DNA of 43,157 bases, taken from positions 151,042,082-151,085,238 of the forward strand of contig NC_068982.1 of NCBI RefSeq assembly GCF_001194135.2, in the 5' to 3' direction. Each line of letters starts with the position of its first letter. The stretch's first letter is position 1. The translations under genes and the position numbers were made by a program. Source of the DNA: Octopus bimaculoides (lineage: Eukaryota). This document shows, in pieces, positions 799-42,783 of the stretch. Under the pieces are notes generated by a model that was not told the DNA's origin, made no database searches, and was given only the letters and a program-made list of their open reading frames with translations.

Positions 799-870
<72 letters not shown>

Positions 871-877
871 CATCATG

Positions 878-915
<38 letters not shown>

Positions 916-919
916 AATA
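799..919. repeat. (AAT)n microsatellite, first of a chain of arrays spanning 799-2777
   Basis: Direct reading; further arrays at 1606-1665, 1886-1921, 2043-2112, 2746-2777. Confidence 0.95.
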
Positions 920-992
920 TTTAAAATTTTTGGTTAGAGTTAAAAAATGCTGATTTTATAGTTTCAAAGGGCCTAAAAAAGGCTGATTTCAT

Positions 993-1605
993 AGTTTTGG
1001 CTAAGAAGGAATATATTCACAGACATGACAGAGCTGGGACCTATATACACTGGAAGCTATGCCAACACTATGGAATAACAACAGAAAAAAGATGGTATAA
1101 ACACACGCCAGAAAAGGTCACAGAAAACGAGAAAGCAACCATACTCTGGGATATGCCAATACACACAGATAGAGAAATTAAGGCAAATAGACCAGATATA
1201 GTTGTCAAAGATCATGAAGGAAAAAAATGCTTTCTAATTGATGTATCAATGCCAGCAGATGACAACGTTTCTCTAAAAGAAATGGAAAAACTTTCAAAAT
1301 ACAAAGACCTGGAAATAGAGATAACTCGAATGTGGAATCTAAAAACAGAAACAATTCCTATCATAGTAAGTGCCTTAGGTATAACAAAAATATATTCAGA
1401 CAAATACATAACAAAAACACCAGGACTTACAAATATATATAACATACAGAAATTGCACTACTGGGCACTGCACACATCCTACGCAAAACACTTTCAATAC
1501 AGTAACCATAAGAGCATCACAACAAACCACAGCACATACCCAAGGCACACAGAGCTGCGCTCGGTAGTGAAGTGAAAGCACGTTATAAAAATAAAACTAC
1601 TGAAC
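993..1605 (+). mobile_element. 5'-truncated R4/Dong-like RLE non-LTR retrotransposon, family A, copy 1 (C-terminal RLE domain and 3' UTR)
   Basis: LAKKEYIHRHD...HWKLC...ILWD...NRPDIV...LIDVS...KLSKYKDL...IPIIVSALG matches the RHD / PD-(D/E)xK motifs; a -1 frameshift near 1450 restores IALLGTAHILRKTLSIQ*; 3' end runs directly into (AAT)n at 1606. Confidence 0.9.
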
Positions 1606-1665
<60 letters not shown>

Positions 1666-1666
<1 letters not shown>

Positions 1667-1870
1667 GTTTCAAATTTTGGCACAAGGCCAGCAGTTTCGG
1701 GGGGAAGGGATAAGTTGATTACGTTGACTCTAGTATTCAACTGGTAGTTTTTTTAATCGATCTCCGAAAGGAATGAAAGACAAAGTCGACCCCGGCGGAA
1801 TTTGAACTCAGAACGTAAAGACGGACGAAATGCCGCTAAACATTTTGCCGGGCGTGCTGACGGTTCTGCT
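1666..1870 (-). mobile_element. tRNA-derived SINE family A with (ATT)n tail
   Basis: Minus strand shows B box GAGTTCAAATTCC, body GTCGACTTTG..TTCAT.CCTTTCGG, and 3' end GGCCTTGTGCCAAAATTTGAAACC followed by (ATT)n; more than 15 related copies in the window. Confidence 0.9.
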
Positions 1871-1921
1871 CTAACCTTAACCCTATAATGATAATAATAA
1901 TAATAATAATGATAATAATGA

Positions 1922-2041
1922 TACCTGTGAATTTGCATGTGTAAACTGGGAATGCATACAATGAGTTTCTCTGCCCTAGGTGTACGGAAAACACTCGGCG
2001 AGAAATGGAAGAAAATTTGAAGAAAAGAAAAAAACAACAAC

Positions 2042-2043
<2 letters not shown>
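1922..2043 (+). mobile_element. 3' UTR-only fragment of R4/Dong-like family B inside (AAT)n
   Basis: Near-identical to 2624-2746 (TACCTGTGAATTTGC...GGAAAACACTC...AACAACAACAT); flanked by (AAT)n on both sides. Confidence 0.9.
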
Positions 2044-2099
<56 letters not shown>

Positions 2100-2111
2100 C
2101 AATAATAATAA

Positions 2112-2746
2112 TATTTACACTGGACAATATGTCAGCATTATAAAATCAAAACCGCTGACAAATGGTATAAACACCACCCTGAAGCTGTGACTGAGGGAGA
2201 AAATGTATCGATTCTCTGGGACCTCCCTGTACATACTGACAAGGCTATAAAAGCTAATAAACCGGATATTATTATAAAGGATCAGACAAAGAAGACGTGT
2301 TTATTAATTGACATGAGTATTCCCTCTGATCATAATATAGCGGCGAAAGAATTTGACAAGATCAGTAAATATAAAGATTTGCTAATAGAAATTGAAAAAA
2401 TGTGGCACCTCAAGGCGACTACCATACCAGTGATTGTAGGATCTCTAGGAATGATGAAAAAAGGTACTGAAACCTATTTGAAAATGATACCAGGCTTACC
2501 ATCCCTACAGGAAGTGCAAAAAATCGTGCTAACTGGAACGACTCATGTACTGAGAAGAGCATTATCGCTGTGAAAACAACATCCATTCATGATTTTTTTT
2601 GTTTGTTTCTTAAATACATGTTTTACCTGTGAATTTGCGTGTGTGAACTGGGAATGCATACAACGAGTTTCTCTGCCCTAGGTGTACGGAAAACACTCAG
2701 CGAGAAATGGAAGAAAATTTGAAGAAAGAAGAAAAGAACAACAACA
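2112..2746 (+). mobile_element. 5'-truncated R4/Dong-like RLE retrotransposon, family B
   Basis: In frame from 2112: YLHWTICQHYKIKTADKWYKHHPEAVTEGENVSILWD...NKPDIII...LIDMSIP...KISKYKDL...GTTHVLRRALSL*; (AAT)n directly at both ends. Confidence 0.92.
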
Positions 2747-4491
2747 TAATAATGATAATAATAATAATTATAATAATGCATGATAACTGACATACCATGC
2801 CCCGGTGACAACAAATTCTAGACTTCAAAGAGGTAAAAGATGATTTATATCGCACCCACCAAATATATAAAAAAAAAAACGTTAAAGTTTATAAAATAAG
2901 ATGAATAAGTATGTCGTAAGAAAAGATTAGTTCTGACATTTAGGGAGGGCAATTCTTTGAAACATTAGAACTCTTCTTACCTTACGCATCACTTATAAGA
3001 ATTGCATTAATGAAGTCATTAGCTTTTTGATTAAAACTTTATCCAGCAACAGCTGAAACGACCGATTAAACAAGTTTCTGAACGAATTCCCAGAGTATAA
3101 GACAGTCAGAGCATATGATGTAACAAGTTTGGACTGCCAGGATATGTTGTGTAGCAAGTTATTGGATTGCTAGAACATAGAGAACCACAAATTATCAAAC
3201 TGTTCGGTCGCATGTTGTAGCAAGTTTGTATTGCCAAGAAGTTGTGGTGCGCAAGTCTTGACAACTAGGAACTGTGAAGTTATTTATTAGATTGTTAAGA
3301 AATATGGAACAATATGTATGGATTGTGGTGTAGCAATTCAGCAGTACATGTGCGACAAGTTCAAATTGCTGTGTTCAAGGTGAAGGACACTTCATTTTAT
3401 ATCTCATTTCAAATAATTTTTTGTTTTGTTTAGTCCAGTGATTCTCAACTAAGGATAAAGTTTCTTCGAGATAAAAATTTCAGAAGAATTGGTAAATATC
3501 TCATACCAGACAATGCAATATTATATGATCTATAAAATTTGTTTAAAATATTAAAAAATTAGATGTCCTTTTTCCTGAGAAGCGTGGGTCTCAAACACGT
3601 ATTATGTAACAACAGATGTGGGTATAACAAATGATTGACAAATTGCGATGCTTGCTATATATACTGTTTATTCTAAATTTTTTTTCATGGAATGTAAGAG
3701 AGTAAATTGCGAAATGAGTCAACCTGAGGGATTAAATGACATGAGTTGCGAATCACTGGTTTAGTCAGGGGAGGAAGGGTAACGATCTTAACTTTTGCAG
3801 GGTTCCAATGACTAGTGACAAGAAAGGATGGAAGAATCTACAATCCGTGCATTACTGTGGTAAGAAGAAGCGCATCAAGGTATCGAATTCTCCTCGATCT
3901 GGAGAACTATTAGAGCTCAAATCTTTGCAACAGAGTCAACTTTGTAACAGTCTTTGCAATCTTTGCAACAAAGCCAACTTTGCTAAAGGAATCTAAGAAC
4001 CGGTTGGGAAGATGGTGTATCAGAACTGCTGTAAAACATCACTGCTATAATCTATCCTAAGATAGGTTTGACTTTCAAACTGTTAAGGCTATAGAAAATA
4101 ATATAAAATGTCGACATAATAAGTTGCGGCAGTTTGCAAAATGATAAAGAATATACATAATACAAATAAAACTAAATAATCACCAATAAATTTAATTATA
4201 TCTATTTGAATACACATGTAGGATATAAACTAGCAAGAAAGCCTTTATAAGGTCAGGCGACTTGTTTTGAAATAGCATCAAATTTTTAAAATCACACCAT
4301 ACTGTGCTAAAATAAAAGAACACGTTGGATAATGTAATCTTAAGTTTGCTGTGTCTGATAAAAATTGAGTGTTATTTTATCACATGTATTGAATGTTATT
4401 TTATCACATGTATTAATGGATCAGAGTTGATCTGAGGAGAAACAGTCACAAAAATTAGAAAACTACACGATGCAAGCATGGCTAATTGGTG

Positions 4492-9942: not shown

Positions 9943-10674
9943 AAAAGGAAGGACTCCTGTTTATGCTTGTGTAAGTATGTTAGTATGTCTAAGTGTACAT
10001 ATTTATATATGTGCATGTATGAGTGCGCGCGCACAAACGTGTATATCGTTGTAGATAATGTTAAAGAAACACACAGTTCATCACATATTGTAAAATCTAA
10101 ATCAGATAACATGAATGTCACCATGTACATTATTAATTGAAAATGGACAAACAGTTGTACAGAAATGAAACTTAATTTCAACATACACAGAAATCTTAAT
10201 TGAAACATAGAAAATAACAACGAAAAACAATCACAAACATTTTGTGTTATTTAAACAAAATTAATTTGATGTCATAAACTTGGAATAAATTTAATTACAA
10301 CAGAGAAACATACAAAACAAAGCAAAATAAAAATGTAACAATAGGCTGAATATTAACAATTAGTAAGCATGAAATGCCGCCGGAGTTGGACTTAAATTTT
10401 CATTGTTGGATCGGTAAAAATAATTACCAATTAAGTACTACGGAGGATATAAACGACTATGCCTAATCACGCCAAAGAATTGTGGTTGCGTGCCTATGTT
10501 AGAAATCAGTCTGAAATCTCAGAACATATGGTAAACAGCCTAAGGGATATATCTCACTCAAAAGCGGCGGACAGAGTATATGATCAAAAAGGTTGACGGT
10601 GATCCAGACGTTATGGGAATGCGAGTTAGCAGATGGATCGAGCGACTATGACTAAGAAATGTATGTATGTATGT

Positions 10675-11114
10675 GCAGATCTGCATGTTTTATATATGTA
10701 TTCTCATGCATATAGTTGCATATTTGGACATACTCATATATTTAAATGATAAACTTCTGAAAAGTTATACAGATTTTTACAGTTCCAGTAATGGACTGGA
10801 TCTGTAGTCTTCGAATTAGCTTCCTCCTTTCTGGTTTTTAAGAAGTCTAATTTCTCAAGATTGGTATTTAGGCACTGTGTTACTACATATCCTAGGGCCC
10901 CAATAATTACAGGTATAAGCCTGAACTTGTAATCTGGAGAGAGTAACTTCAGATTTCTCAATAGTTCAGCATAGGTGTTCTCTTTTTCACTGATCCTCAG
11001 CTTTATGTTAACATCCGCTGGGCAGCTAATTTCCACAGCTGTGCACAGTTTCTCTTCCCTATCCCCAATCATTATATCAGGTCTGTTGTGCTTACATTTT
11101 ATTGAGGTCTTCAC
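10675..11114 (-). mobile_element. 5'-truncated RLE non-LTR retrotransposon, family C, flanked by (CATA)n
   Basis: VKTSIKCKHNRPDIMIGDREEKLCTAVEISCPADVNI...EKENTYAELLRNL...IPVIIGALGYV; minus strand reads (CATA)n then element then (CATA)n. Confidence 0.85.
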
Positions 11115-11206
11115 TATGTATGTATGTATGTATGTCTGTATGTATGCATGCATGTATGTCTGTATATATTGTGTATGTATGGATTGATAGACAGATGAAT
11201 GTGTGT

Positions 11207-12619: not shown

Positions 12620-14004
12620 TAAACAACAAACGGATGTATTTGTTTAACGCTCGATAAGTGAGAAAGTCTTTGACGTTTCGAGCCTACGCTCTTCAACACA
12701 AAGGAACACAGAAATAAACGGAGAGAGAAAATAAAACAGGTTTAGTGGCTAGCGATTTATTATGCCGAATGCCGGACAGAAGGGTCAGACAGGAGAGCTA
12801 AGAAATAGGGGAGATAATAAAGTAGTGGTGATCTCAAAACGAAGGTGCACGTGCGTGTGTATGTGAGACCGTGTATGTGCGTGTGGATGAGGGCTAGTGA
12901 CCTTGACGTGTGCGTGTGTGCATGTGTAGGTGTGTGGATGATGGTGTGGGTGCTGGGAAGTGGTCAGTGTTAGTGTGCGTGGGGTGGTGTGATATGGTGT
13001 GGTGTGGTGTGTAGTGTACGGTGTGGTGTGTGGTGTATGGTGTGGTGTGTGNNNNNNNNNNNNNNNNNNNNNNNNNNNNNNNNNNNNNNGTGGGGAAGTC
13101 GAGAGGGGGCATAATAAGGGTGGGGATGGGGTATGTGAGAGTGGAATGTATGGGATGGGGTGGGGTGGGATGGGATATATAGGGATGGTGGGGTTAGAAT
13201 GTGTAGGTAACGAGGGAGGTGTTGACGATGAAGGGAGAAGGGGAAGGGAGAAGATGGGTAGGAATAAAGAGAGGAAGTAAGTGTCAGAGCAAGAGAGGAG
13301 AGGTGGGTGGGAGGAAGTAGGTGTGATAGGAAGAGAGGAGAGAGTATTAGGGTTAGATGAAGAGGGGAGGAGAGTTGAGCTCATGTGGCGCAAAGGAGCG
13401 AAGATGCGAAGAGAGAAGATTAATTCCTGTTCATGGCGAAGACGGGAATCCGGATGGCCGCTGTGCGAAGACAATCCGAACACAGATAGGTGTTGTAAAG
13501 AATGACCGGTAGAGCGGAAATGGCGCAAAACCGGGGTGTCGTTGCCGAGCCTGATGTCTCGGAGGTGTTCCGCGAACCGGTCAGCCAAGCGGCGTCCCGT
13601 TTGACTGATGTACAGAGAAGGACAGCGAGAGCAGGAAATGCAGTAGATGACGTTGCTAGAAGTGCAGGTGAAGGAGTCAGTGACATGATAGGATCGATGA
13701 TGGGTGCCTGTGAGGAGGGTTGTGTTGGAGAGGTAAGGGCAAGTGCGGCAGCGTGGGCGGGAGCAGGGAAACGAGCCGGGTCGAGAGGTTGGGTTAGAGA
13801 AGAAGCTGTGGACCAAGAGGTCTCGTAAGTTGTGGGCTCGTTTGAAGGAGGGGAGGGGTCGTTTAGGGAAGTTGTGCGAAGTGGAGGGATCGGACTGGAG
13901 TTGCCGGAAGGCTCAGAGAATGGTGCACTGGAGAGGCAGGGTGGTGGGGTGGTAGGTGAGGGAACACGGGAGACGGCGGGGTGAATGCGGTGGGAGAGAG
14001 CAAA
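12620..14004 (-). mobile_element. 5'-truncated Penelope-like element (Neptune-like): RT-EN linker, GIY-YIG endonuclease, pyrimidine-rich 3' region and hammerhead
   Basis: SLTYHP...IL*AFRQ (CGA>TGA at 13913)...NLRDLLVHS...PCSRPRCRTC...CTSSNVIYCISCSRCPSLYISQTGRRLADRFAEH...HF...H...RLRHEQELIFSL; 5' junction abuts (TA)n. Confidence 0.92.
12668..12703 (-). ncRNA. Minimal type I hammerhead ribozyme motif with degenerate core, at the Penelope 3' end
   Basis: CTTT-GTGTTGA-A-GAGC(GTAG)GCTC-GAAA-CGTC-AAAG: stem I 4 bp, stem II 4 bp, palindromic ACGT stem III; core differs from CUGANGA at C3 and A6. Confidence 0.7.
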
Positions 14005-18798: not shown

Positions 18799-19917
18799 AG
18801 AGGGGAGGGAGGTGGAGGATTTTTGCAATATGCCTAGAGAGAAAGAAATAGAGAGAAATAGATTGAAAATGAGGAGAATAAAGACTTTACGACTGGTTTT
18901 CTTTGTGCAGTGTCTTTTAATCTTGCTTCAATAAGCCTACCTGTAACAGGTGACTTTGCAAATTGAGATAAACATCTAAATTTTGTAGTTCTTGTAATGC
19001 TCTACGTTCAATCGCCGATGAATTTCCTCCCTGTCTGTAATGTCCATTGTCACCAGTGAATCCGTTAAATTATGTTATAACATCACGTCGTTTGTGTATC
19101 CATATTAAATGTGGCTTTGAAACGTATATTCGCTCTAATGTTTGTTCGTGGGCAATAAATACATCTCTTAAGTCTATCGGGTGTTCGGGTTAAATTTGAC
19201 AGTTTGCATAAAAGGAAAAGAAAAAACAATGCCCCATCCAAAAATAGAAGTATTTTAAAACATCAAAAAATATCAACTAGATTATGGCTAGGAGATAACG
19301 ATTTACTCAAAATAGCCGCCCTCAGCTTCCGCCATGAATTCAAGACGGCTCCAAAACCTGGCGCATGCATTCCTCACTGCGTTCCTGGGAAGACCTTCGA
19401 ATACCTTCTTGATCCTTGCTGCCATCTCGGCCTTAGTGTTGCAGGCAGAGCGGTGTGTCTTTCTCAAAAGTATCCCAACATAGTAATCCATGGGATTACA
19501 ACTGGGGGAATTATGAGGCCAGAAACTGATGCTGGTGAAATCGTAGAAATTCTCTGACAACCACTTCTGCTTCTTTCCGGAGGTATGGCAAAGAGCCGAA
19601 TTCCTCTGCCTCACATATGGCCTTCCAGCAGCAATACTTTCCAGCCACAGTTTGACTACAGTCTCCAGCAGCTTCACATAGCCGTCTGAATTTTGCCTAA
19701 GGCCCTGTTTAAAGATATGAGGATGACTTCCGGCATATGGACGCAGTTAGAACACCTGCTGTAACCCTTCCTGTTGGCCACAGCTTCATAGTCTTCTTTG
19801 TAGCTGTCCATGTCACGTCTTACAGCCTTTATAGTGTTCATAGAGCATAGAGCAGCAATGGTGATGTCGGCATTTTGATACCCGGCGCGAATCATCATGA
19901 TATAAGTAACTCTTTTC

Positions 19918-20490
19918 GGATCTTTTTTAAAACGGGGGCCACATTTTTCATTAACGAAACACTTTGAAACTTGGAACACTGGTAGAATGTGTCATATAAA
20001 ACATCTTTTTCTCTTAGTCTTCTTAAAAAAAAAAAGAAATCCATAAATTATTCCATGTTAAAGTTGTCGTATTTCTGTAATTTCAACCAATCACTGACGT
20101 CCATTCAGCCGATATACATTAAGTGCCGACTACATAAACAAACGATTCTGAAACAATTAACCCTAACCCTAACCCTAACTCTAACCCTAACCCTAACCCT
20201 ACGGTTAGGGTTAGGGTTAAAGCAAATTTAAAATGAAAAAAGCAAATAAAACGAAGAATCGTTTGTTTATGTAGTCGGCACTTAATGTATATCGGCTGAA
20301 TGGACGTCAGTGATTGGTTGAAATTATCGAAATAAGACAATTTTTTACATGAAATAAATTCGAATACAAAAATATTTTTCTGTTCTATAACACAAAATAG
20401 ATAAGTATACGAAGTTTGAAAGTCTTTCGGTACCAAAAACACTACGTAAAACATTAATGAAAAATGTGGCCCCCGTTTTAAAAAAGATCC
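19918..20490. mobile_element. Merlin-type MITE (573 bp), copy 1
   Basis: About 37-bp TIRs starting GGATCTTTTTTAAAACGGGGGCCACATTTTTCATTAA; 8-bp TSD CTCTTTTC (19910-17 and 20491-98); GG termini with 8-bp TSD are established Merlin/IS1016 features. Confidence 0.85.
20157..20220. repeat. Inverted telomere-type repeat (CCCTAA)~7-CGG-(TTAGGG)2 inside the MITE
   Basis: Direct reading. Confidence 0.95.
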
Positions 20491-25250: not shown

Positions 25251-25471
25251 CACATTTTAGCAATTTAAAGAGGAGTTTCATGATTTGTAGTCTTTCCAAC
25301 AATTTCTCCATTAACACGTTCGCTGGATGTTCTGTATTTAGGAAACACACACACACACACACACACATACATGCACACACGTAGATGCATATATATATAT
25401 AGTTATATATATGCGTGTGTATGCATATAAACACAGAGAGACAGACGCACGTGAAAGAAGAGTTGTAAAGT

Positions 25472-26090
25472 AAAATTTGGCACAAGGCCCGCGATTTCGG
25501 GGAAGGGGTTTAAGTCGATTACATCGATCTCAGTGTTCAACTGGTACTTATTTTATCAAACGCCGAAAGGCTGAAAGGCAAATATCGACCTCAGCGGAAT
25601 TTGAACTCAGACGGACGAAATACCGCTAAGCATTTTGTCCGGCGCAGTAACGATTCTTATTTCTTTATTGCCCACAAGGGGCTAAACATAGAGGGGACAA
25701 ACAAGGACAGACAAAGGGATAAAATCGATTACATCAACCTCAGTGCGTAACTGGTACTTAATTTATCGACATCCGAAAGGATGAAAGGCAAAGTCGACCT
25801 CGGCGGAATTTGAACTCAGAACGTAACGGCAGATGAAATACCGCTAAGCATTTCGCCCGGCGTGCTAACGTTTCTGCCAGCTCGCCGCCTTAGTTGTAAC
25901 GTATATTTCATGAGAAGAATAAGTCGATTACATCAACCCTAGTGTTCAACTATACTTATTTATCGACCTCGAAAGGATGAAAGGCAAAGTCAACCCCAGG
26001 GAGGATTTGAAATCAGAACGTAAAGGCGAACGAAATGCCGCTAAGCATTTCGCCCAGCTTGCAAACGATTCTGCCAGCTCACCGCCTTAA
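25472..26090 (-). mobile_element. Cluster of three SINE family A copies (25472-25655, 25656-25890, 25915-26090)
   Basis: Repeated consensus; the middle copy has a different 3' segment ending CCCCTTGTGGGCAATAAAGAAATAAG. Confidence 0.88.
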
Positions 26091-26654
26091 TAATTGTAAA
26101 GTATATTGAAATGTATTTTACAATGGTTAAAAATCATTTGCTAAAAGAACTCAATACGTTGGGTAAAGTGGATAGAGATGCATATTATGTCGAAAGCTCA
26201 GTCTCATCAGACTTTCGTCCCAGAGTGGGTTGTTCATGAAGTGGAGAAGAGCCCAACTTGAGGCGAAACTGACTAGAATAACTTCTTACATACATAATAC
26301 ATGCATATAACGTGAGACATTTCAGAAATTCTCCATTCGAGTTTCTTAGAATGAACGAGTTTCTTAGAATGCACACGGTCGCAAATACACTGCTGTACAT
26401 ACAGGCAGGAACAGTGATGAAATATACACACTTATCTACAAAAATAACATGCACGCCCATTATACGAATGAAATATTTTCCACATACTAACTCATTTACC
26501 TACTCACAAATCCTAGTGAATTGTCGTGACTAAAACTAAAGAACCTTGGCACTGCGGTAGTATCCGACTTGAATTCTGCAAAGGAAAAAAAATAAATCCA
26601 AGAAAAATTGTACATAAGTATATTCCTACCTAGGATAAGGATAAAGAAGGCGTC

Positions 26655-26898
26655 CTTTCTGAGTCCTATACACTCATAAGGACCTGTTTTCCAGTTTCTG
26701 TAGTGTATACATATTTAACCGCCAGATGAGACGCCGGTCCATCACGGAGTTATTCAGTTTTGCCAGCTGAGTGAACTGGAGCAATGTGAAATGAAGTGCT
26801 TTGCTTAAGAACACAATGCGTCGTCCAGTCCAGGAATTGAAATCACCATCTTACGACCATGAGTCCAGCACCCTAAACATTAGGCCACACGCCTCCAC
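26655..26898 (-). mobile_element. tRNA-derived SINE family C
   Basis: Head GTGGAGGCGTGTGGCCTAATGTTTAGGGTGCTGG...TTTCAATTCCTGG; central TTGTGTTCTTAAGCAAAGCACTT resembles the CORE/Meta/V-type shared domain (inference). Confidence 0.75.
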
Positions 26899-27080
26899 TA
26901 CATACCTACCTACCTACCTACCTACATACATACATACATAAACATATTTACATATGATTAATTAAAATCTGCATGATGACAAAAGGGCCATTTGTTTCAT
27001 TTAAGTGTTTGTTAAACGAAAGAAAAGTTACAACGGTTGGTTGGATTAATGGCCAAGTCACATGTCAGTATTATTAAAAA

Positions 27081-27170
27081 CTAGCGTTACCCATCATATG
27101 ACGGGCAACTTTGAAAGTATACTTTTACGACTATGGGTAATTTCATAAAAGTTAAATTATAATTATCTTA
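27081..27170 (-). mobile_element. Helitron-type 3' terminus (5' end not found)
   Basis: Minus strand hairpin CCCGTCA-TA-TGATGGG (27090-27105) followed by TAACG-CTAG|T. Confidence 0.55.
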
Positions 27171-27172
27171 CG

Positions 27173-27464
27173 ACGGCGGCGAGCTGGCAGAATCGTCAGT
27201 ATACCGGGTAAAAAATACTTAGTGGCATTTTGTCCGTCTTCACATTATAAGTTCAAACTCCATCGATTCTATGATTCTCACTCTCTCACAGTGCGTAGCA
27301 TTTCTTTACTCATTGCCTGCCAGCAAGTTTAGTATATGTACTCATCCTGCACCTCATATGTTAATGCTTCTTGTATCTCTTTTTTTGCACACTCACTCCC
27401 CCCTCTCTCTAAACGTTTTAAAGCGCGGCAGGATAAGTCAATCATTGAACAAGCATTTACATCG

Positions 27465-27511
<47 letters not shown>

Positions 27512-28398
27512 GTGTTCTGCCGAGGTCGACTTTGCCTTTCATACTTTCAGGGTCGATAAATTAAGTACCAGTGAAACACTGGGGTCGATGAAATCGATTA
27601 GTCCCCGACCCTAAATTTCAAGTCTTGTGCCTATAGTAGAAAGGATTATTATTATTATTGAGTATTCCGCCGTGGTCGACTTTGCCTCTCATCCTTTTGT
27701 GGTCGATAAAACAAGCACCAGTGAAACACCGGGAGCAATGTAATCGATTAGTCCCCTCCCCACAGATTTCAGGCCTTGTGCCTTTAGTAAAAAGGATTAT
27801 TAAGGCGACGAGCTAGCAGATCGTTAGCACCCCAGGTAAATGCTTAGCGGCACTTCGTCCGTCTTTACGGTCTGAGTTCAAATTTCGCCGAGGTCGACTT
27901 TGCCTTTCATCCTTTCGAGGTCGATAAAATAAGTACCAGTTGAGGACTAGAGTCGATGTAATCGATTAGTCGCCTCCCCCAAAATGNNNNNNNNNNNNNN
28001 NNNNNNNNNNNNNNNNNNNNNNNNNNNNNNNNNNNNNNNNNNNNNNNNNNNNNNNNNNNTACGGTCTGAGTTCAAATTTCGCCGAGGTCGACTTTGCCTT
28101 TCATCCTTTCGAGGTCGATAAAATAAGTACCAGTTGAGGACTAGAGTCGATGTAATCGATTAGTCGCCTCCCCCAAAATGTCAGGCCTTGTGCCTTTAGC
28201 AGAAAGGATTATTATTAGTAGAAAGTAGAATTGTTAGCAGCATTTCGTCGCTCTTTAAGTTCTGGGTTCAAATTTCATCGAGTTCAATTTTACCTTTTGA
28301 AGTCGATAAAATAAGTACCAGTTGAGTAGTGGGGTCAATATAATCGACTTACTCCCTCTCTCGAAACTGCGGGCCTTGTGCCAAAATTTGAAATCATT
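27173..28398 (+). mobile_element. Head-to-tail cluster of SINE family A copies (27173-27262, 27510-27660, 27665-27800, 27802-27986, 28061-28215, 28225-28398)
   Basis: Each copy starts after an (ATT)n run; several end GGCCTTGTGCCTTTAG.A.AAAGGATTATT. Confidence 0.88.
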
Positions 28399-28453
28399 AA
28401 ATAAAAACAAATAAGCACGCCCGCGCGTGCGCGCGCACACACAGATACATAAT

Positions 28454-32067: not shown

Positions 32068-32121
<54 letters not shown>

Positions 32122-32520
32122 GTATTTGCACAGCTTCTAACGCTGGAGATGTACTATAGTGTCAGCTGTTCACTACCAGTGACTAAGGTAACACTTCTTA
32201 TTTTTCGAGCACCTTTCGGAGTATTCGAGCGGTTCCAAGCAGTGCTGTTTTCTGCAAGTGCTCCAATCTTATTGCAACCCCTATTTGCTACACGTACCTC
32301 TCAAGATTTTTGCTCACTATTCCCAGGGCTCCGACAATTATTGGTACTACTGCCACCTTTCTCATCGACTACAATTTCATAACTTCCCAAGCTAACCTGT
32401 CATATCTCTCGACTTTTCTTTCTTCCTTATCGCATACCTTGTTGTCAGCTGGGCATGCTATATCTATGATCCAGCATAATTTTCTTTCTCAATTAAGACT
32501 ATGTCTGGCTTTCTATTCTC
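32122..32520 (-). mobile_element. 5'-truncated R4/Dong-like RLE retrotransposon, family E (absent from the ORF track)
   Basis: IENRKPDIVLIEKE/LCWIIDIACPADNKVCDKEERKVERYDRL...VVPIIVGALG...LQKTALLGTARILRKVLEK* with one frameshift and two internal stops; (AAT)n directly at both ends on its sense strand. Confidence 0.88.
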
Positions 32521-32638
<118 letters not shown>

Positions 32639-33099
32639 GTTCAGTAGTTTTATTTTTATAACGTGCTTTCACTTCACTACCGAGCGCAGCTCTGTGCGCC
32701 TTGGGTATGTGCTGTGGTTTGCTGTGGTGCTCTTATGTTTACTTTATTGAAAGTGTTTNNNNNNNNNNNNNNNNNNNNNNNNNNNNNNNNNNNNNNNNNN
32801 NNNNNNNNNNNNNNNNNNNNNNNNNNNNNNNNNNNNNNNNNNNNNNNNNNNNNNNNNNNNNNNNNNNNNNNNNNNNNNNNNNNNNNNNNNNNNNNNNNNN
32901 NNNNNNNNNNNNNNNNNNNNNNNNNNNNNNNGCCTTAATTTCTCTATCTGTGTGTATTGGCATATCCCAGAGTATGGTTGCTTTCTCGTTTTCTGTGACC
33001 TTTTCTGGCGTGTGTTTATACCATCTTTTTCCTGTTGTTATTCCATAGTGTTGGCATAGCTTCCAGTGTATATAGGTCCCAGCTCTGTCGTGTCTGTGA

Positions 33100-33100
<1 letters not shown>
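32639..33100 (-). mobile_element. R4/Dong-like family A, copy 2 (gap inside)
   Basis: 5' part differs from 1018-1184 at only 2 positions by eye; same 3' terminus ...AAAACTACTGAAC then (AAT)n; 5' end joins (AAT)n at HRHD. Confidence 0.92.
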
Positions 33101-33155
<55 letters not shown>

Positions 33156-33160
33156 TATTA

Positions 33161-33206
<46 letters not shown>

Positions 33207-33208
33207 GA

Positions 33209-33373
33209 AGGTGGCGTACTGGCAGAAACGTTAGCATGCAGGGAAAAATGCTTAGTGGCATTTCGTCCATCTTTACGATCCGAGTTCAAATTCCACTGAG
33301 TTCGACTTCGCCTTTCATCCTTTCGACTCGATCCCGCCCCAAAGTTGCTGGCCTTGTGCTAAAATTTGAAACC
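33209..33373 (+). mobile_element. SINE family A copy with internal deletion
   Basis: GGTGGCGTACTGGCAGAAACG...GAGTTCAAATTCC...AAATTTGAAACCATTATT. Confidence 0.85.
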
Positions 33374-34551
33374 ATTATTATAATTGTTGTTGTAAGGTCC
33401 AGGATTTGGGCTATCATTCCTATGCCGACTATTATATAAAAATTGTTACTGCTTTTAATCTCCAAATTCTGGTTATCTCTGTTTCGAGATCTTTATATTT
33501 TGAGTGGCGTAGTTTTAAAATTCAGTCATTATTTTCTTTGTCTTTCTACTTAGTCGTGTTAATTTACTTAGAGTTCTGTTGAGAATATTATAGCTGTGTA
33601 GATTATTACTAGGACAGTAATGTCTTTTACCGTCTTTTATTTTCAGAAATTTGGCACTACTTTAAATCGCAATTTCATGCCTCGATGAAATATTTCTTCT
33701 TAATATTTTCTTTCATTTGTGTGCTTTTTACTCTGTCTAGTTCAAGCGACTGTGTAGAATAAAAAAAATCTATCGGCTTTTCCCAAGATTGATTATATAT
33801 TTTATATCCAGCATTTTGAAGACAATAGTTTGGTCGTAGTTTACCAAACTGATTAACCATAGGTTCTAAGCATTTTCGATATCGAGGTCAACAAAAATTA
33901 TGTGTACAAACTTGGGCAGTGTAAAGATATTTTTGTTCGACTGATCGTTTTATCGGTAATTTCCGTGTCATGCGTATCTTTCACTATTGGCACACTTACG
34001 TACACACACGCTCGACGGATTCCTGCATACACTCGGGAACAGGAGGTGCAGGGATGCAAGAGCGCCATATGAAATTACTTGGGATAATGAAAAAACTTTG
34101 AACATCCTCGGTTGAACTTGGGTTTGCATCCCCAAAGCAAATTTCGTTCCTGCGCTTATGGACTTCTGTCCTTTAAATTAAACTCATAAAGTATTCGTCA
34201 ACCAGAGTTTGTAGTATGAGACACTCAATGTGCGGCGTAGAGGGATGAAAGCTGAAATTACGTTGTTGTAAAGAGGTCTACTAAAAGACAAAGCAATGTT
34301 TTCTTCACATTATATGTTAAGGATGAATATGTACTGAATGTAAAATATATCTCAACTATTTTTGTTTCTCTGAAAAGTTACAATATACAGCAACAGAATA
34401 TGTTGGTTGAGAAGATAGAATGTGAATGAACCAGCAGAGTCAACTAGCAAATACAAGTATGATAAACTGTTTACCTACAAGAAATAGCAATCATATATAC
34501 CGCATATCATAATTTTCTGTTTAACCTGGGGTTAAAAGCATTGATATAGAC

Positions 34552-42659: not shown

Positions 42660-42783
42660 ACAAAAATACCCTGATGTTGTTGTTGAAATTCCAATGAAGG
42701 TTCCAATGAAGAAACCTTGGGTCTAGGTTAGAAACCGGTTCTTTCTCTGTTGGCAAGAAATCTTGAAATAAACTGAATAATGA
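42660..42783 (+). mobile_element. Short retroposed 3'-end fragment embedded in (CATA)n
   Basis: Complex 120-bp segment (CCCTGATGTTGTTGTTGAAATTCCAATGAAG...AATAAACTGAATAATGA) with (CATA)n on both sides; contains a 12-bp tandem duplication TTCCAATGAAG(G). Confidence 0.5.

What the first reader, a model, noticed from the sequence alone, without database searches (positions are those of the whole stretch)
799..2777. Stack of three RLE retrotransposon insertions from two families threaded through one (AAT)n chain
Seen: family A (993-1605), a family B 3' UTR (1922-2043) and family B (2112-2746) share one orientation, and each 3' end abuts (AAT)n. Established: Dong elements of the R4 clade target TAA repeats. 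Inference: several divergent lineages use the same microsatellite, and each insertion leaves target sequence on both sides, so one array becomes a growing landing pad.
Basis: partly seen in the sequence, partly recalled or inferred. Interest (0 to 1): 0.75.

Follow-up and report, generated by a model that had tools for sequence, protein, structure and literature searches.

The report
Dong-type LINE pile-up in TAA microsatellite
This stretch is a pile-up of dead, front-truncated copies of a known kind of jumping gene (Dong/R4-type LINEs, which insert only into TAA repeats), plus one SINE on the other strand; it is a clear but ordinary example of documented behaviour.

Summary
Window 799-2777 has five (AAT)n tracts separating three co-oriented 3'-terminal fragments of LINEs that encode a restriction-like endonuclease (RLE). 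These are family A (about 993-1605), a family B 3'-UTR-only piece (1922-2041) and family B (2112-2745). A and B are 55% identical in protein.

A second stack of the same kind lies on the minus strand at 32069-33503.

Full-length relatives are RT + CCHC + RLE proteins with no AP endonuclease. They match solved R2 structures. Ten of 12 distinct relative 3' ends run into (TAA)n, including copies in shrimp and Octopus sinensis. Truncated copies and one full-length copy have TAA repeats on both sides. Similar stacks occur in long-read assemblies.

This is the published behaviour of Dong/R4 elements, which target (TAA)n in insects, molluscs and cnidarians, and Dong-R4 LINEs are already annotated in octopus genomes. 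"Growing landing pad" stays an inference, no empty site could be examined, and clade placement was not tested by an RT tree. Novelty and interest are low. Side leads: a covarying 3'-UTR hairpin, and a sister RLE lineage flanked by (CATA)n.

The parts
799..919 (+). (AAT)40 tract with CAT/GAT/ACT variants. It lies upstream of the first element, and no recognised element precedes it.
920..992 (+). Degenerate 5' junction of family A copy 1: about 27 nt of unexplained filler, then a short direct duplication (949-964 and 982-997).
993..1505 (+). Family A coding remnant, the C-terminal RLE domain (RPD..IDV..K.KY). One-base frameshift near 1449-1455; stop in the corrected frame at 1503-1505.
1506..1605 (+). 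Family A 3' UTR, containing the two-helix hairpin at 1537-1566 (one mismatch).
1606..1665 (+). (AAT)20 tract lying between the 3' end of family A and the inferred 3' end of the antisense SINE.
1666..1884 (-). Its inferred sense strand is the minus strand, so its RNA would end ...CCAAAAUUUGAAACC(AUU)n.
1885..1923 (+). (ATA)13 tract with GAT variants.
1922..2041 (+). Family B 3'-UTR-only fragment, 94% identical to 2624-2745. It retains the hairpin at 1973-1999.
2042..2113 (+). (ATA)24 tract with an AACAACAAT interruption that resembles the last bases of the family B 3' UTR.
2112..2573 (+). Family B coding remnant: 153 intact codons plus stop, covering the RLE domain.
2574..2745 (+). Family B 3' UTR with the hairpin at 2675-2701 (outer helix weakened by a G-to-A change).
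2746..2777 (+). (ATA)10 terminal tract, followed by unique sequence.
32069..33503 (-). Second stack on the minus strand, in order: family C fragment 33503-33423; SINE 33373-33222 (same relative orientation as in stack 1); (ATA)35 33206-33100; family A copy 2 33105-32639 (96-98% DNA identity to copy 1; N gap inside); (AAT)39 32638-32521; family D 32520-32122; (AAT)17 32121-32069.

Best explanation
Window 799-2777 is a graveyard of four retroposon insertions in one TAA/TTA microsatellite. Three are 5'-truncated, inactive copies of (TAA)n-specific LINEs of the Dong/R4 type, from two families. These LINEs encode one ORF with RT, a CCHC knuckle and a restriction-like endonuclease. The fourth is a SINE that most likely entered on the opposite strand.

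Likely mechanism:
1. The LINE protein binds its own RNA, probably through a conserved two-helix hairpin in the 3' UTR.
2. It nicks the TTA strand of a TAA/TTA tract.
3. The (UAA)n tail of the RNA pairs with the nicked strand, and reverse transcription starts there (target-primed reverse transcription).
4. Most cDNAs stop early. The truncated 5' end is then joined to the upstream TAA repeats, often at A/T-rich microhomology.

Each event leaves TAA repeats on both sides of the new copy. Later elements of any TAA-specific family can therefore land next to it in the same orientation, which builds a stack.

Shown here: the fragments and their homology, their shared orientation, TAA on both sides (including a full-length relative), recurrence in this window and in other genomes, and covariation in the hairpin.

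Inferred: which strand is nicked, tail annealing, the role of the hairpin, the order and timing of insertions, and net growth of the tract.
For: - Anatomy and tracts.
- All RLE hits in the window are C-terminal, 5'-truncated fragments.
- A second stack with families C, A, D and the SINE lies at 32069-33503.
- Full-length relatives carry only RVT_1 and zf-RVT. They align to R2 structures (9nl2_A, E = 9e-38) through the CCHC and RLE motifs.
- None of 108 full-length relatives has an N-terminal C2H2 finger.
- (TAA)n follows the 3' end in L001, L002 (O. sinensis), L003, L004, L005 (Penaeus chinensis), L008, the small L007 fragment, and three loci of family P0259.
- (TAA)n lies directly 5' of truncated copies in L007 and L008, and of a full-length copy in L010.
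- Stacks occur in long-read assemblies (L002, L007, L008).
- Hairpin: the same fold in 8-9 of 10 UTRs. On 7 distinct sequences, 81% of cells pair against 64% when shuffled, and 6 of 10 pairs show compensatory change.
- Literature: Dong targets (TAA)n in insects, molluscs and cnidarians (PMC7998251, PMC3812793); most RLE LINEs are target-specific (PMC4640811); Dong-R4 is abundant in Octopus (PMC13282606, PMC9115989, PMC8967140).
Against: - No orthologous empty site was obtained, so the state of the locus before the first insertion is unknown.
- Clade placement rests on architecture, target and literature, not on an RT tree.
- Two relatives lack a TAA tail (Clytia L006, and the main copy in L007).
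- No HDV-like ribozyme was detected at relatives' 5' ends with Rfam.
- The covariance model finds the non-training A and B hairpins only weakly (E = 0.12 to 6.4).
- The window is a gapped draft scaffold.
- SINE orientation is inferred and lacks support from a tRNA model.
Confidence: 0.8

Rival explanations
1. Part of the chain was made in one integration event. The reverse transcriptase jumped from the 5' end of one RNA onto the (UAA)n tail of another, as R2 RT does in vitro, giving head-to-tail units such as B-UTR plus B without separate insertions.
For: Two family B units lie next to each other, 72 bp apart and in the same orientation. The AACAACAAT interruption at about 2095-2103 looks like an aborted re-start on a family B 3' end. 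Template jumping by R2-type RT is established biochemistry (my own knowledge).
Against: B-UTR and B differ at 7 of 122 positions. The chain also mixes families A and B and an antisense SINE, which a single cDNA cannot produce. The same families occur singly with TAA on both sides elsewhere. Nothing here dates the units.
Confidence: 0.12
2. The stack is an assembly artefact: contigs ending in (AAT)n were joined wrongly in a short-read scaffold.
For: The window has 12 N gaps. The tracts at 799-919, 32521-32638 and 33100-33206 exceed 100 bp.
Against: There is no N inside 799-2777. Four of its five tracts are 32-72 bp, and the tracts carry distinguishing variant units. Equivalent stacks occur in a PacBio O. 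sinensis assembly (L002) and in contigs whose names suggest long-read metagenome assemblies (L007, L008).
Confidence: 0.05
3. There is no targeting. (AAT)n is only a tail that each element makes for itself, and the adjacency is chance or later recombination between tails.
For: Every array that has an element upstream could formally be that element's tail. Non-LTR tails are known to seed microsatellites (PMC3812793).
Against: 5'-truncated ends, which carry no tail, abut (TAA)n directly in 4 of 4 clear window cases and in 3 external truncated copies, plus one full-length copy. Arrays at 799-919, in L007 and in L008 have no recognised element upstream. TAA arrays cover only 1.5% of the window, so five such junctions arising by chance is about 1e-9.
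Confidence: 0.03

Closest known systems
Dong (Bombyx mori), with DongAg (Anopheles) and DongBg (the snail Biomphalaria glabrata); R4 clade
   Same: A single ORF with RT, a C-terminal CCHC knuckle and a restriction-like endonuclease. No AP endonuclease and no N-terminal zinc finger. Inserted in (TAA)n in a fixed orientation, with the repeat on both sides. Copies are mostly 5'-truncated.
   Different: The window holds only 3' fragments. Their families share about 40-55% protein identity with the full-length relatives I could retrieve, and no direct comparison with Dong itself or an RT tree was possible. No HDV-like 5' ribozyme was detected in relatives with Rfam.
Dong-R4 LINEs annotated in Octopus bimaculoides, O. 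vulgaris and O. sinensis (PMC9115989, PMC13282606, PMC8967140)
   Same: Same host group, judged from relatives in O. sinensis, O. vulgaris and O. bimaculoides. Same element class, and abundant.
   Different: In the passages I searched, those papers report abundance and activity. I found no mention there of insertion sites, stacks or the 3'-UTR hairpin. I could not check whether families A, B and D equal their library consensuses.
R2 (28S rDNA-specific RLE LINE; solved structures 9nl2, 9dou, 8gh6)
   Same: The RT, CCHC and RLE core aligns with R2 (E = 9e-38). Both integrate by target-primed reverse transcription, and R2 recognises its own 3' UTR.
   Different: R2 has N-terminal zinc-finger and Myb domains and a single rDNA target. 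These elements have no C2H2 finger, and their target is a microsatellite.
Other microsatellite-specific LINEs: Togen (TG)n in the NeSL group; some HERO families; the AP-endonuclease types Waldo (ACAY)n, Kibi (TC)n and Koshi (TTC)n
   Same: They use a simple repeat as a safe-harbour target, and the repeat flanks both ends.
   Different: They belong to different clades, and some use a different endonuclease. The repeat is also different, although family E in this window (CATA/ACAT) uses a repeat that resembles Waldo's target.

Membership tests
R4/Dong clade of RLE-encoding LINEs | C-terminal CCHC knuckle followed by a PD-(D/E)XK restriction-like endonuclease | tested here: met
   Families A and B encode ..RPDIV..IDV..P.D..K..EK.SKYKDL... 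The full-length relative P0123 aligns to R2 protein 9nl2_A through the CCHC and RLE motifs. A CCHC motif is present in 103 of 108 relatives. Family A starts just after the knuckle, and family B starts further downstream.
R4/Dong clade of RLE-encoding LINEs | A single ORF with an RT domain and no AP endonuclease | tested here: met
   Tested on full-length relatives only. P0118, P0123, P0142, P0146, P0191 and P0227 carry RVT_1 plus zf-RVT and no Exo_endo_phos domain. The window copies are too truncated to test.
R4/Dong clade of RLE-encoding LINEs | No N-terminal zinc finger, and instead a diverged Myb/SANT-like domain (PMC7998251) | tested here: inconclusive
   None of 108 relatives has a C2H2 pattern in the first 400 residues. 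A conserved motif KW(T/S)xE..W..(17-22)..W(R)..NP...L.NQRR.I is visible. Pfam hmmscan gives no Myb/SANT hit, and no profile-profile search was available.
R4/Dong clade of RLE-encoding LINEs | Dong subgroup: orientation-specific insertion in (TAA)n, with the repeat on both sides | tested here: met
   Window: the 3' ends of A1, A2, B, B-UTR and D, and the 5' ends of A2, B, B-UTR and D. Elsewhere: 10 of 12 3' ends, 5' ends in L007 and L008, and a full-length copy in L010.
R4/Dong clade of RLE-encoding LINEs | RT-domain phylogeny grouping with R4, Dong and Rex6 rather than R2, NeSL, HERO or CRE | not tested
   No reference sequences of these clades could be fetched with the tools. Only R2 chains in the PDB were compared.
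R4/Dong clade of RLE-encoding LINEs | HDV-like self-cleaving ribozyme at the 5' end (shown for Dong and R4 in PMC3774820) | tested here: inconclusive
   Rfam found no HDV-like match in the 5' regions of L003, L004 or L010. Rfam's models may not cover these ribozymes, and the window copies lack 5' ends.
R2 clade | N-terminal zinc finger(s) plus Myb, and a 28S rDNA target | tested here: not met
   No C2H2 finger in any of 108 relatives, and the flanks are (TAA)n, not rDNA.
LINE-mobilised SINE (segment 1666-1884) | Multicopy short element with a fixed 3' end, 5' truncations, target-site duplications and a pol III-type head | tested here: inconclusive
   There are 17 hits in the window. Target-site duplications of 19 and 13 nt flank two copies. 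Truncated copies lack the CAGCTCGCC end. Runs of four or more T number 21 on one strand against 8 on the other. ARAGORN and Rfam find no tRNA-like head.

The most novel reading that the evidence does not exclude
In octopod genomes, TAA/TTA tracts may serve as two-stranded landing pads. Dong-type LINEs would enter reading TAA. The genome's dominant SINE would enter on the other strand, using an (AUU)n tail and giving 13-19-nt target-site duplications that point to a different, AP-endonuclease-type partner LINE. LINE tails would then seed sites for SINE expansion. The Dong-type LINEs would also share a covarying 3'-UTR hairpin as their RT recognition element, and a sister RLE lineage (family E) would have been retargeted to (ACAT)n.
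Probability: 0.3. Interest if true: 0.4.

Novelty: already known. Interest (0 to 1): 0.2.

Why it matters
The main value is for annotation. In this genome, (AAT)n microsatellites are largely by-products and targets of retroposons, so markers or gene models built on them will hit multicopy flanks. The locus is a compact illustration of how a repeat-specific LINE confines itself to harmless DNA and how several lineages share that niche.

Three side observations could be worth a specialist's follow-up. None changes what is known about how these elements work:
- the 3'-UTR hairpin;
- SINE entry on the opposite strand;
- a (CATA)n-associated sister lineage.

Tried and rejected
- Pfam and PDB searches with the family A and B fragments alone gave nothing useful. 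Full-length relatives were needed.
- Rfam on 700-2900, on SINE-rich 25400-28450, and on the 5' ends of full-length relatives gave no credible family, no tRNA and no HDV ribozyme. ARAGORN found no tRNA.
- An exact look-up of ten flank and element ORFs found none in the protein collection. The route to an orthologous empty site was therefore closed.
- I first read the SINE as co-oriented with the LINEs and possibly mobilised by them. I dropped this after looking at target-site duplications, truncation polarity, the variable end module and T-run asymmetry.
- Covariance model R1 recovered the non-training family A and B hairpins only at chance-level E-values. The evidence for the hairpin therefore rests on folding and pair counts from a small set.
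- Hmmscan of N-terminal segments did not detect the Myb/SANT-like domain reported in the literature.
Full report
**What is there**

The window is a gapped draft eukaryotic scaffold with 12 N runs. It is rich in microsatellites. The closest relatives of its repeats come from Octopus sinensis, O. vulgaris and O. bimaculoides, so the host is probably an octopod. That is an inference.

Between 799 and 2777 there are five (AAT)n tracts: 799-919, 1606-1665, 1885-1923, 2042-2113 and 2746-2777. Four inserts lie between them.

- **Family A (about 993-1605).** It encodes the C-terminal part of a LINE protein..HRHDRAGTYIHW..ILWD..RPDIVV..LIDVSMPAD..KEMEKLSKYKDLEIEI... It has a one-base frameshift near 1449-1455. 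The stop in the corrected frame is at 1503-1505, followed by a 100-nt 3' UTR.
- **Family B (2112-2745).** It keeps 153 intact codons of the same domain and a 172-nt 3' UTR. A and B are 55% identical in protein and about 66% in DNA, so they are different families.
- **B-UTR (1922-2041).** This is a 120-bp fragment of the family B 3' UTR, 94% identical to 2624-2745.
- **SINE (1666-1884).** It is a copy of a SINE with 17 hits in the window.

All three LINE fragments are on the + strand, and each 3' end runs straight into (AAT)n. TAA arrays occupy 1.5% of the window, so this is far beyond chance.

**The same thing elsewhere in the window**

A second stack lies on the minus strand at 32069-33503. 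In order it holds:
1. a degenerate family C fragment;
2. the SINE;
3. (ATA)35;
4. a second family A copy (96-98% DNA identity to the first, with an N gap inside);
5. (AAT)39;
6. a fourth family, D;
7. (AAT)17, and then unique DNA.

Every RLE hit in the window is a C-terminal, 5'-truncated fragment. The truncated 5' ends of A2, B, B-UTR and D abut the upstream tract directly, often where the element sequence itself is AAT-like. That fits microhomology-assisted joining.

**What kind of element**

The fragments alone hit nothing in Pfam or the PDB. An exhaustive HMMER search with the family B remnant found 9473 relatives. They include proteins of 1050-1300 aa in which the match is always at the extreme C-terminus.

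Six of these proteins carry RVT_1 and a zf-RVT knuckle and no AP endonuclease. P0123 aligns to solved R2 proteins (9nl2_A, E = 9e-38) from the RT domain through the CCHC knuckle and the RLE motifs.

None of 108 full-length relatives has an N-terminal C2H2 finger. They share a KW(T/S)xE..W...W..NP..L.NQRR.I motif. This may be the diverged Myb/SANT domain reported for R4/Dong (PMC7998251), but hmmscan does not confirm it.

Architecture and target therefore fit R4/Dong. I could not build an RT tree with reference clades.

**Is (TAA)n a target or only a tail?**

I fetched DNA around relatives. (TAA)n follows the 3' UTR in:
- L001;
- L002 (O. sinensis PacBio assembly);
- L003 and L004;
- L005 (Penaeus chinensis);
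- L008;
- a small fragment in L007;
- three different loci of one full-length family, L009-L018.

It does not follow the 3' UTR in Clytia L006, or in the main L007 copy within 2.5 kb. That is 10 of 12 distinct ends.

More telling are the 5' ends, which carry no tail. In L007, two LINE fragments and an unidentified element are threaded on (AAT)48, (AAT)26 and (AAT)38. In L008, (AAT)31 precedes a truncated copy, which is followed by (AAT)11 and then a fragment of a distant RLE family. The full-length copy in L010 reads ...TTAATAATAATAATAATAA|ACCGTGGG... at its 5' end and ...GAATGAA|(ATA)8|GGCATC at its 3' end.

So the repeat was already present on the upstream side when each element arrived. This is the definition of Dong-type target specificity. 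Whether a given upstream tract was a native microsatellite or the tail of an earlier insertion cannot be told. The tracts at 799-919 and at the left ends of the L007 and L008 chains have no recognised element before them.

L002, L007 and L008 appear to come from long-read assemblies. For L007 and L008 I infer this from the contig naming. The stacks are therefore unlikely to be a short-read artefact.

**The SINE**

I first read it as co-oriented with the LINEs. Four points argue for the opposite strand:
- Two copies outside tracts have target-site duplications of 19 and 13 nt, with the GGTTTC end abutting ..ATAAT or ..ATATT.
- Subfamilies differ at the GGTTTC end, as SINE 3' modules do.
- Short copies lack the other end, which is 5' truncation only if the minus strand is the sense strand.
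- Runs of four or more T, which terminate pol III, number 21 on the GGTTTC strand and 8 on the other.

The RNA would then end ...GAAACC(AUU)n and would prime on the AAT strand. A head-to-tail SINE chain joined by (ATT)2-5 lies at 27466-28400. Its first member is preceded by (TTA)15.

About half of the SINE copies are not in tracts at all. This looks like a preference for AAT-like nick sites rather than strict specificity, and the long duplications suggest an AP-endonuclease-type partner LINE. No tRNA-like head is detected, so the orientation remains an inference.

**Mechanism**

The best-supported reading is repeated target-primed reverse transcription by TAA-specific RLE LINEs. The steps would be a nick in the TTA strand, pairing of the (UAA)n RNA tail, frequent early termination, and joining to the upstream repeat. 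None of these steps was shown directly here.

One new piece of support is a two-helix hairpin 40-90 nt upstream of the tail. It consists of an outer helix, a 3-nt bulge, an inner hairpin and a single C bulge. It is present in A, B, B-UTR, D and five external relatives. On seven distinct sequences:
- 81% of cells pair, against 64% when shuffled (0 of 500 shuffles reach it);
- 6 of 10 pairs show compensatory change;
- slid controls fall to 47% or less.

The covariance model finds the non-training family A and B copies only weakly. The sample is small and the alignment is model-fitted, so this is a lead, not a result. The 120-bp B-UTR fragment still contains the hairpin.

**Rivals**

- *Template jumping in a single event* could explain the adjacent B-UTR and B units. 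It cannot explain a chain that mixes families and an antisense SINE. The two family B units differ at 7 of 122 positions.
- *Mis-assembly* is unlikely, for the reasons given above.
- *Tail-only without targeting* is contradicted by the 5' junctions.

**Comparison with what is known**

- Dong was found in Bombyx, and Dong elements in Anopheles and the snail Biomphalaria target (TAA)n (PMC3812793, citing Kojima and Fujiwara 2004).
- Most RLE LINEs are target-specific for rDNA or microsatellites (PMC4640811).
- Dong-R4 LINEs are annotated as abundant, and possibly active, in octopus genomes (PMC13282606, PMC9115989, PMC8967140).

The finding is therefore a correct recognition of a known system. 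A stack is the expected outcome when every insertion recreates its own target. "Growing landing pad" is reasonable but was not measured.

**Verdict**

The kind of element is already known. Interest is 0.2.

Noticed in passing
window 10659-11181 (minus strand); also L019 3100-3450: Family E is a more distant RLE-LINE fragment (11135-10794, 37% identical to family A). It is preceded by (CATA)17, and its 3' UTR ends in (ACAT)4. A copy on an O. vulgaris chromosome (L019) is likewise preceded by ..CCATCCATCCATACATACATAC and ends ..AAAACATACATACATACATAC. A 52%-identical relative from another host (L020) shows no repeat. This may be a sister lineage retargeted to (ACAT)n.
   Followed up: partly
window 1537-1566, 1973-1999, 2675-2701, 32159-32194 (-), 32678-32707 (-); L001 3767-3804, L003 3731-3768, L004 3506-3543, L009 3874-3911: A conserved two-helix hairpin lies in the 3' UTR of the TAA-tailed RLE LINEs and shows compensatory changes across families and hosts. 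It is probably the RT recognition element.
   Followed up: partly
window 27466-28400: A head-to-tail chain of at least four SINE copies from two subfamilies, some 5'-truncated, joined by (ATT)2-5. The chain is preceded by (TTA)15 with no element upstream, and there is an N gap inside.
   Followed up: partly
window 32069-33503 (minus strand): A second stack: family C fragment, SINE, (ATA)35, family A copy 2, (AAT)39, family D, (AAT)17.
   Followed up: yes
L002 4070-4990 (O. sinensis): An unidentified element of about 460 bp ending ..CTCTCTCACTCAATG runs into about 270 bp of impure (ATA)n. An antisense SINE follows. This may be another TAA-tailed non-autonomous retroposon.
   Followed up: no
window 20128-20280: A telomere-like (TAACCC)7 is immediately followed by (GGTTAG)3. 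The pair sits inside a 25-nt inverted repeat (GCCGACTACATAAACAAACGATTCT and its complement), so this looks like a foldback or MITE-like element with internal head-to-head telomeric repeats.
   Followed up: no
window 12785-13816 (-) and 19303-19677 (-): One ORF carries a GIY-YIG-like motif typical of Penelope-like elements, and there is a mariner-like transposase fragment. Both were identified by eye only.
   Followed up: no
window 42708-42745 and L019 about 3470-3520: A shared sequence (GAAGAAACCTTGGGTCTAGGTTAGAAACCGGTT in the window copy) lies next to (CATA)n/(ACAT)n tracts in both the window and the O. vulgaris locus. It may be another repeat-associated element.
   Followed up: no
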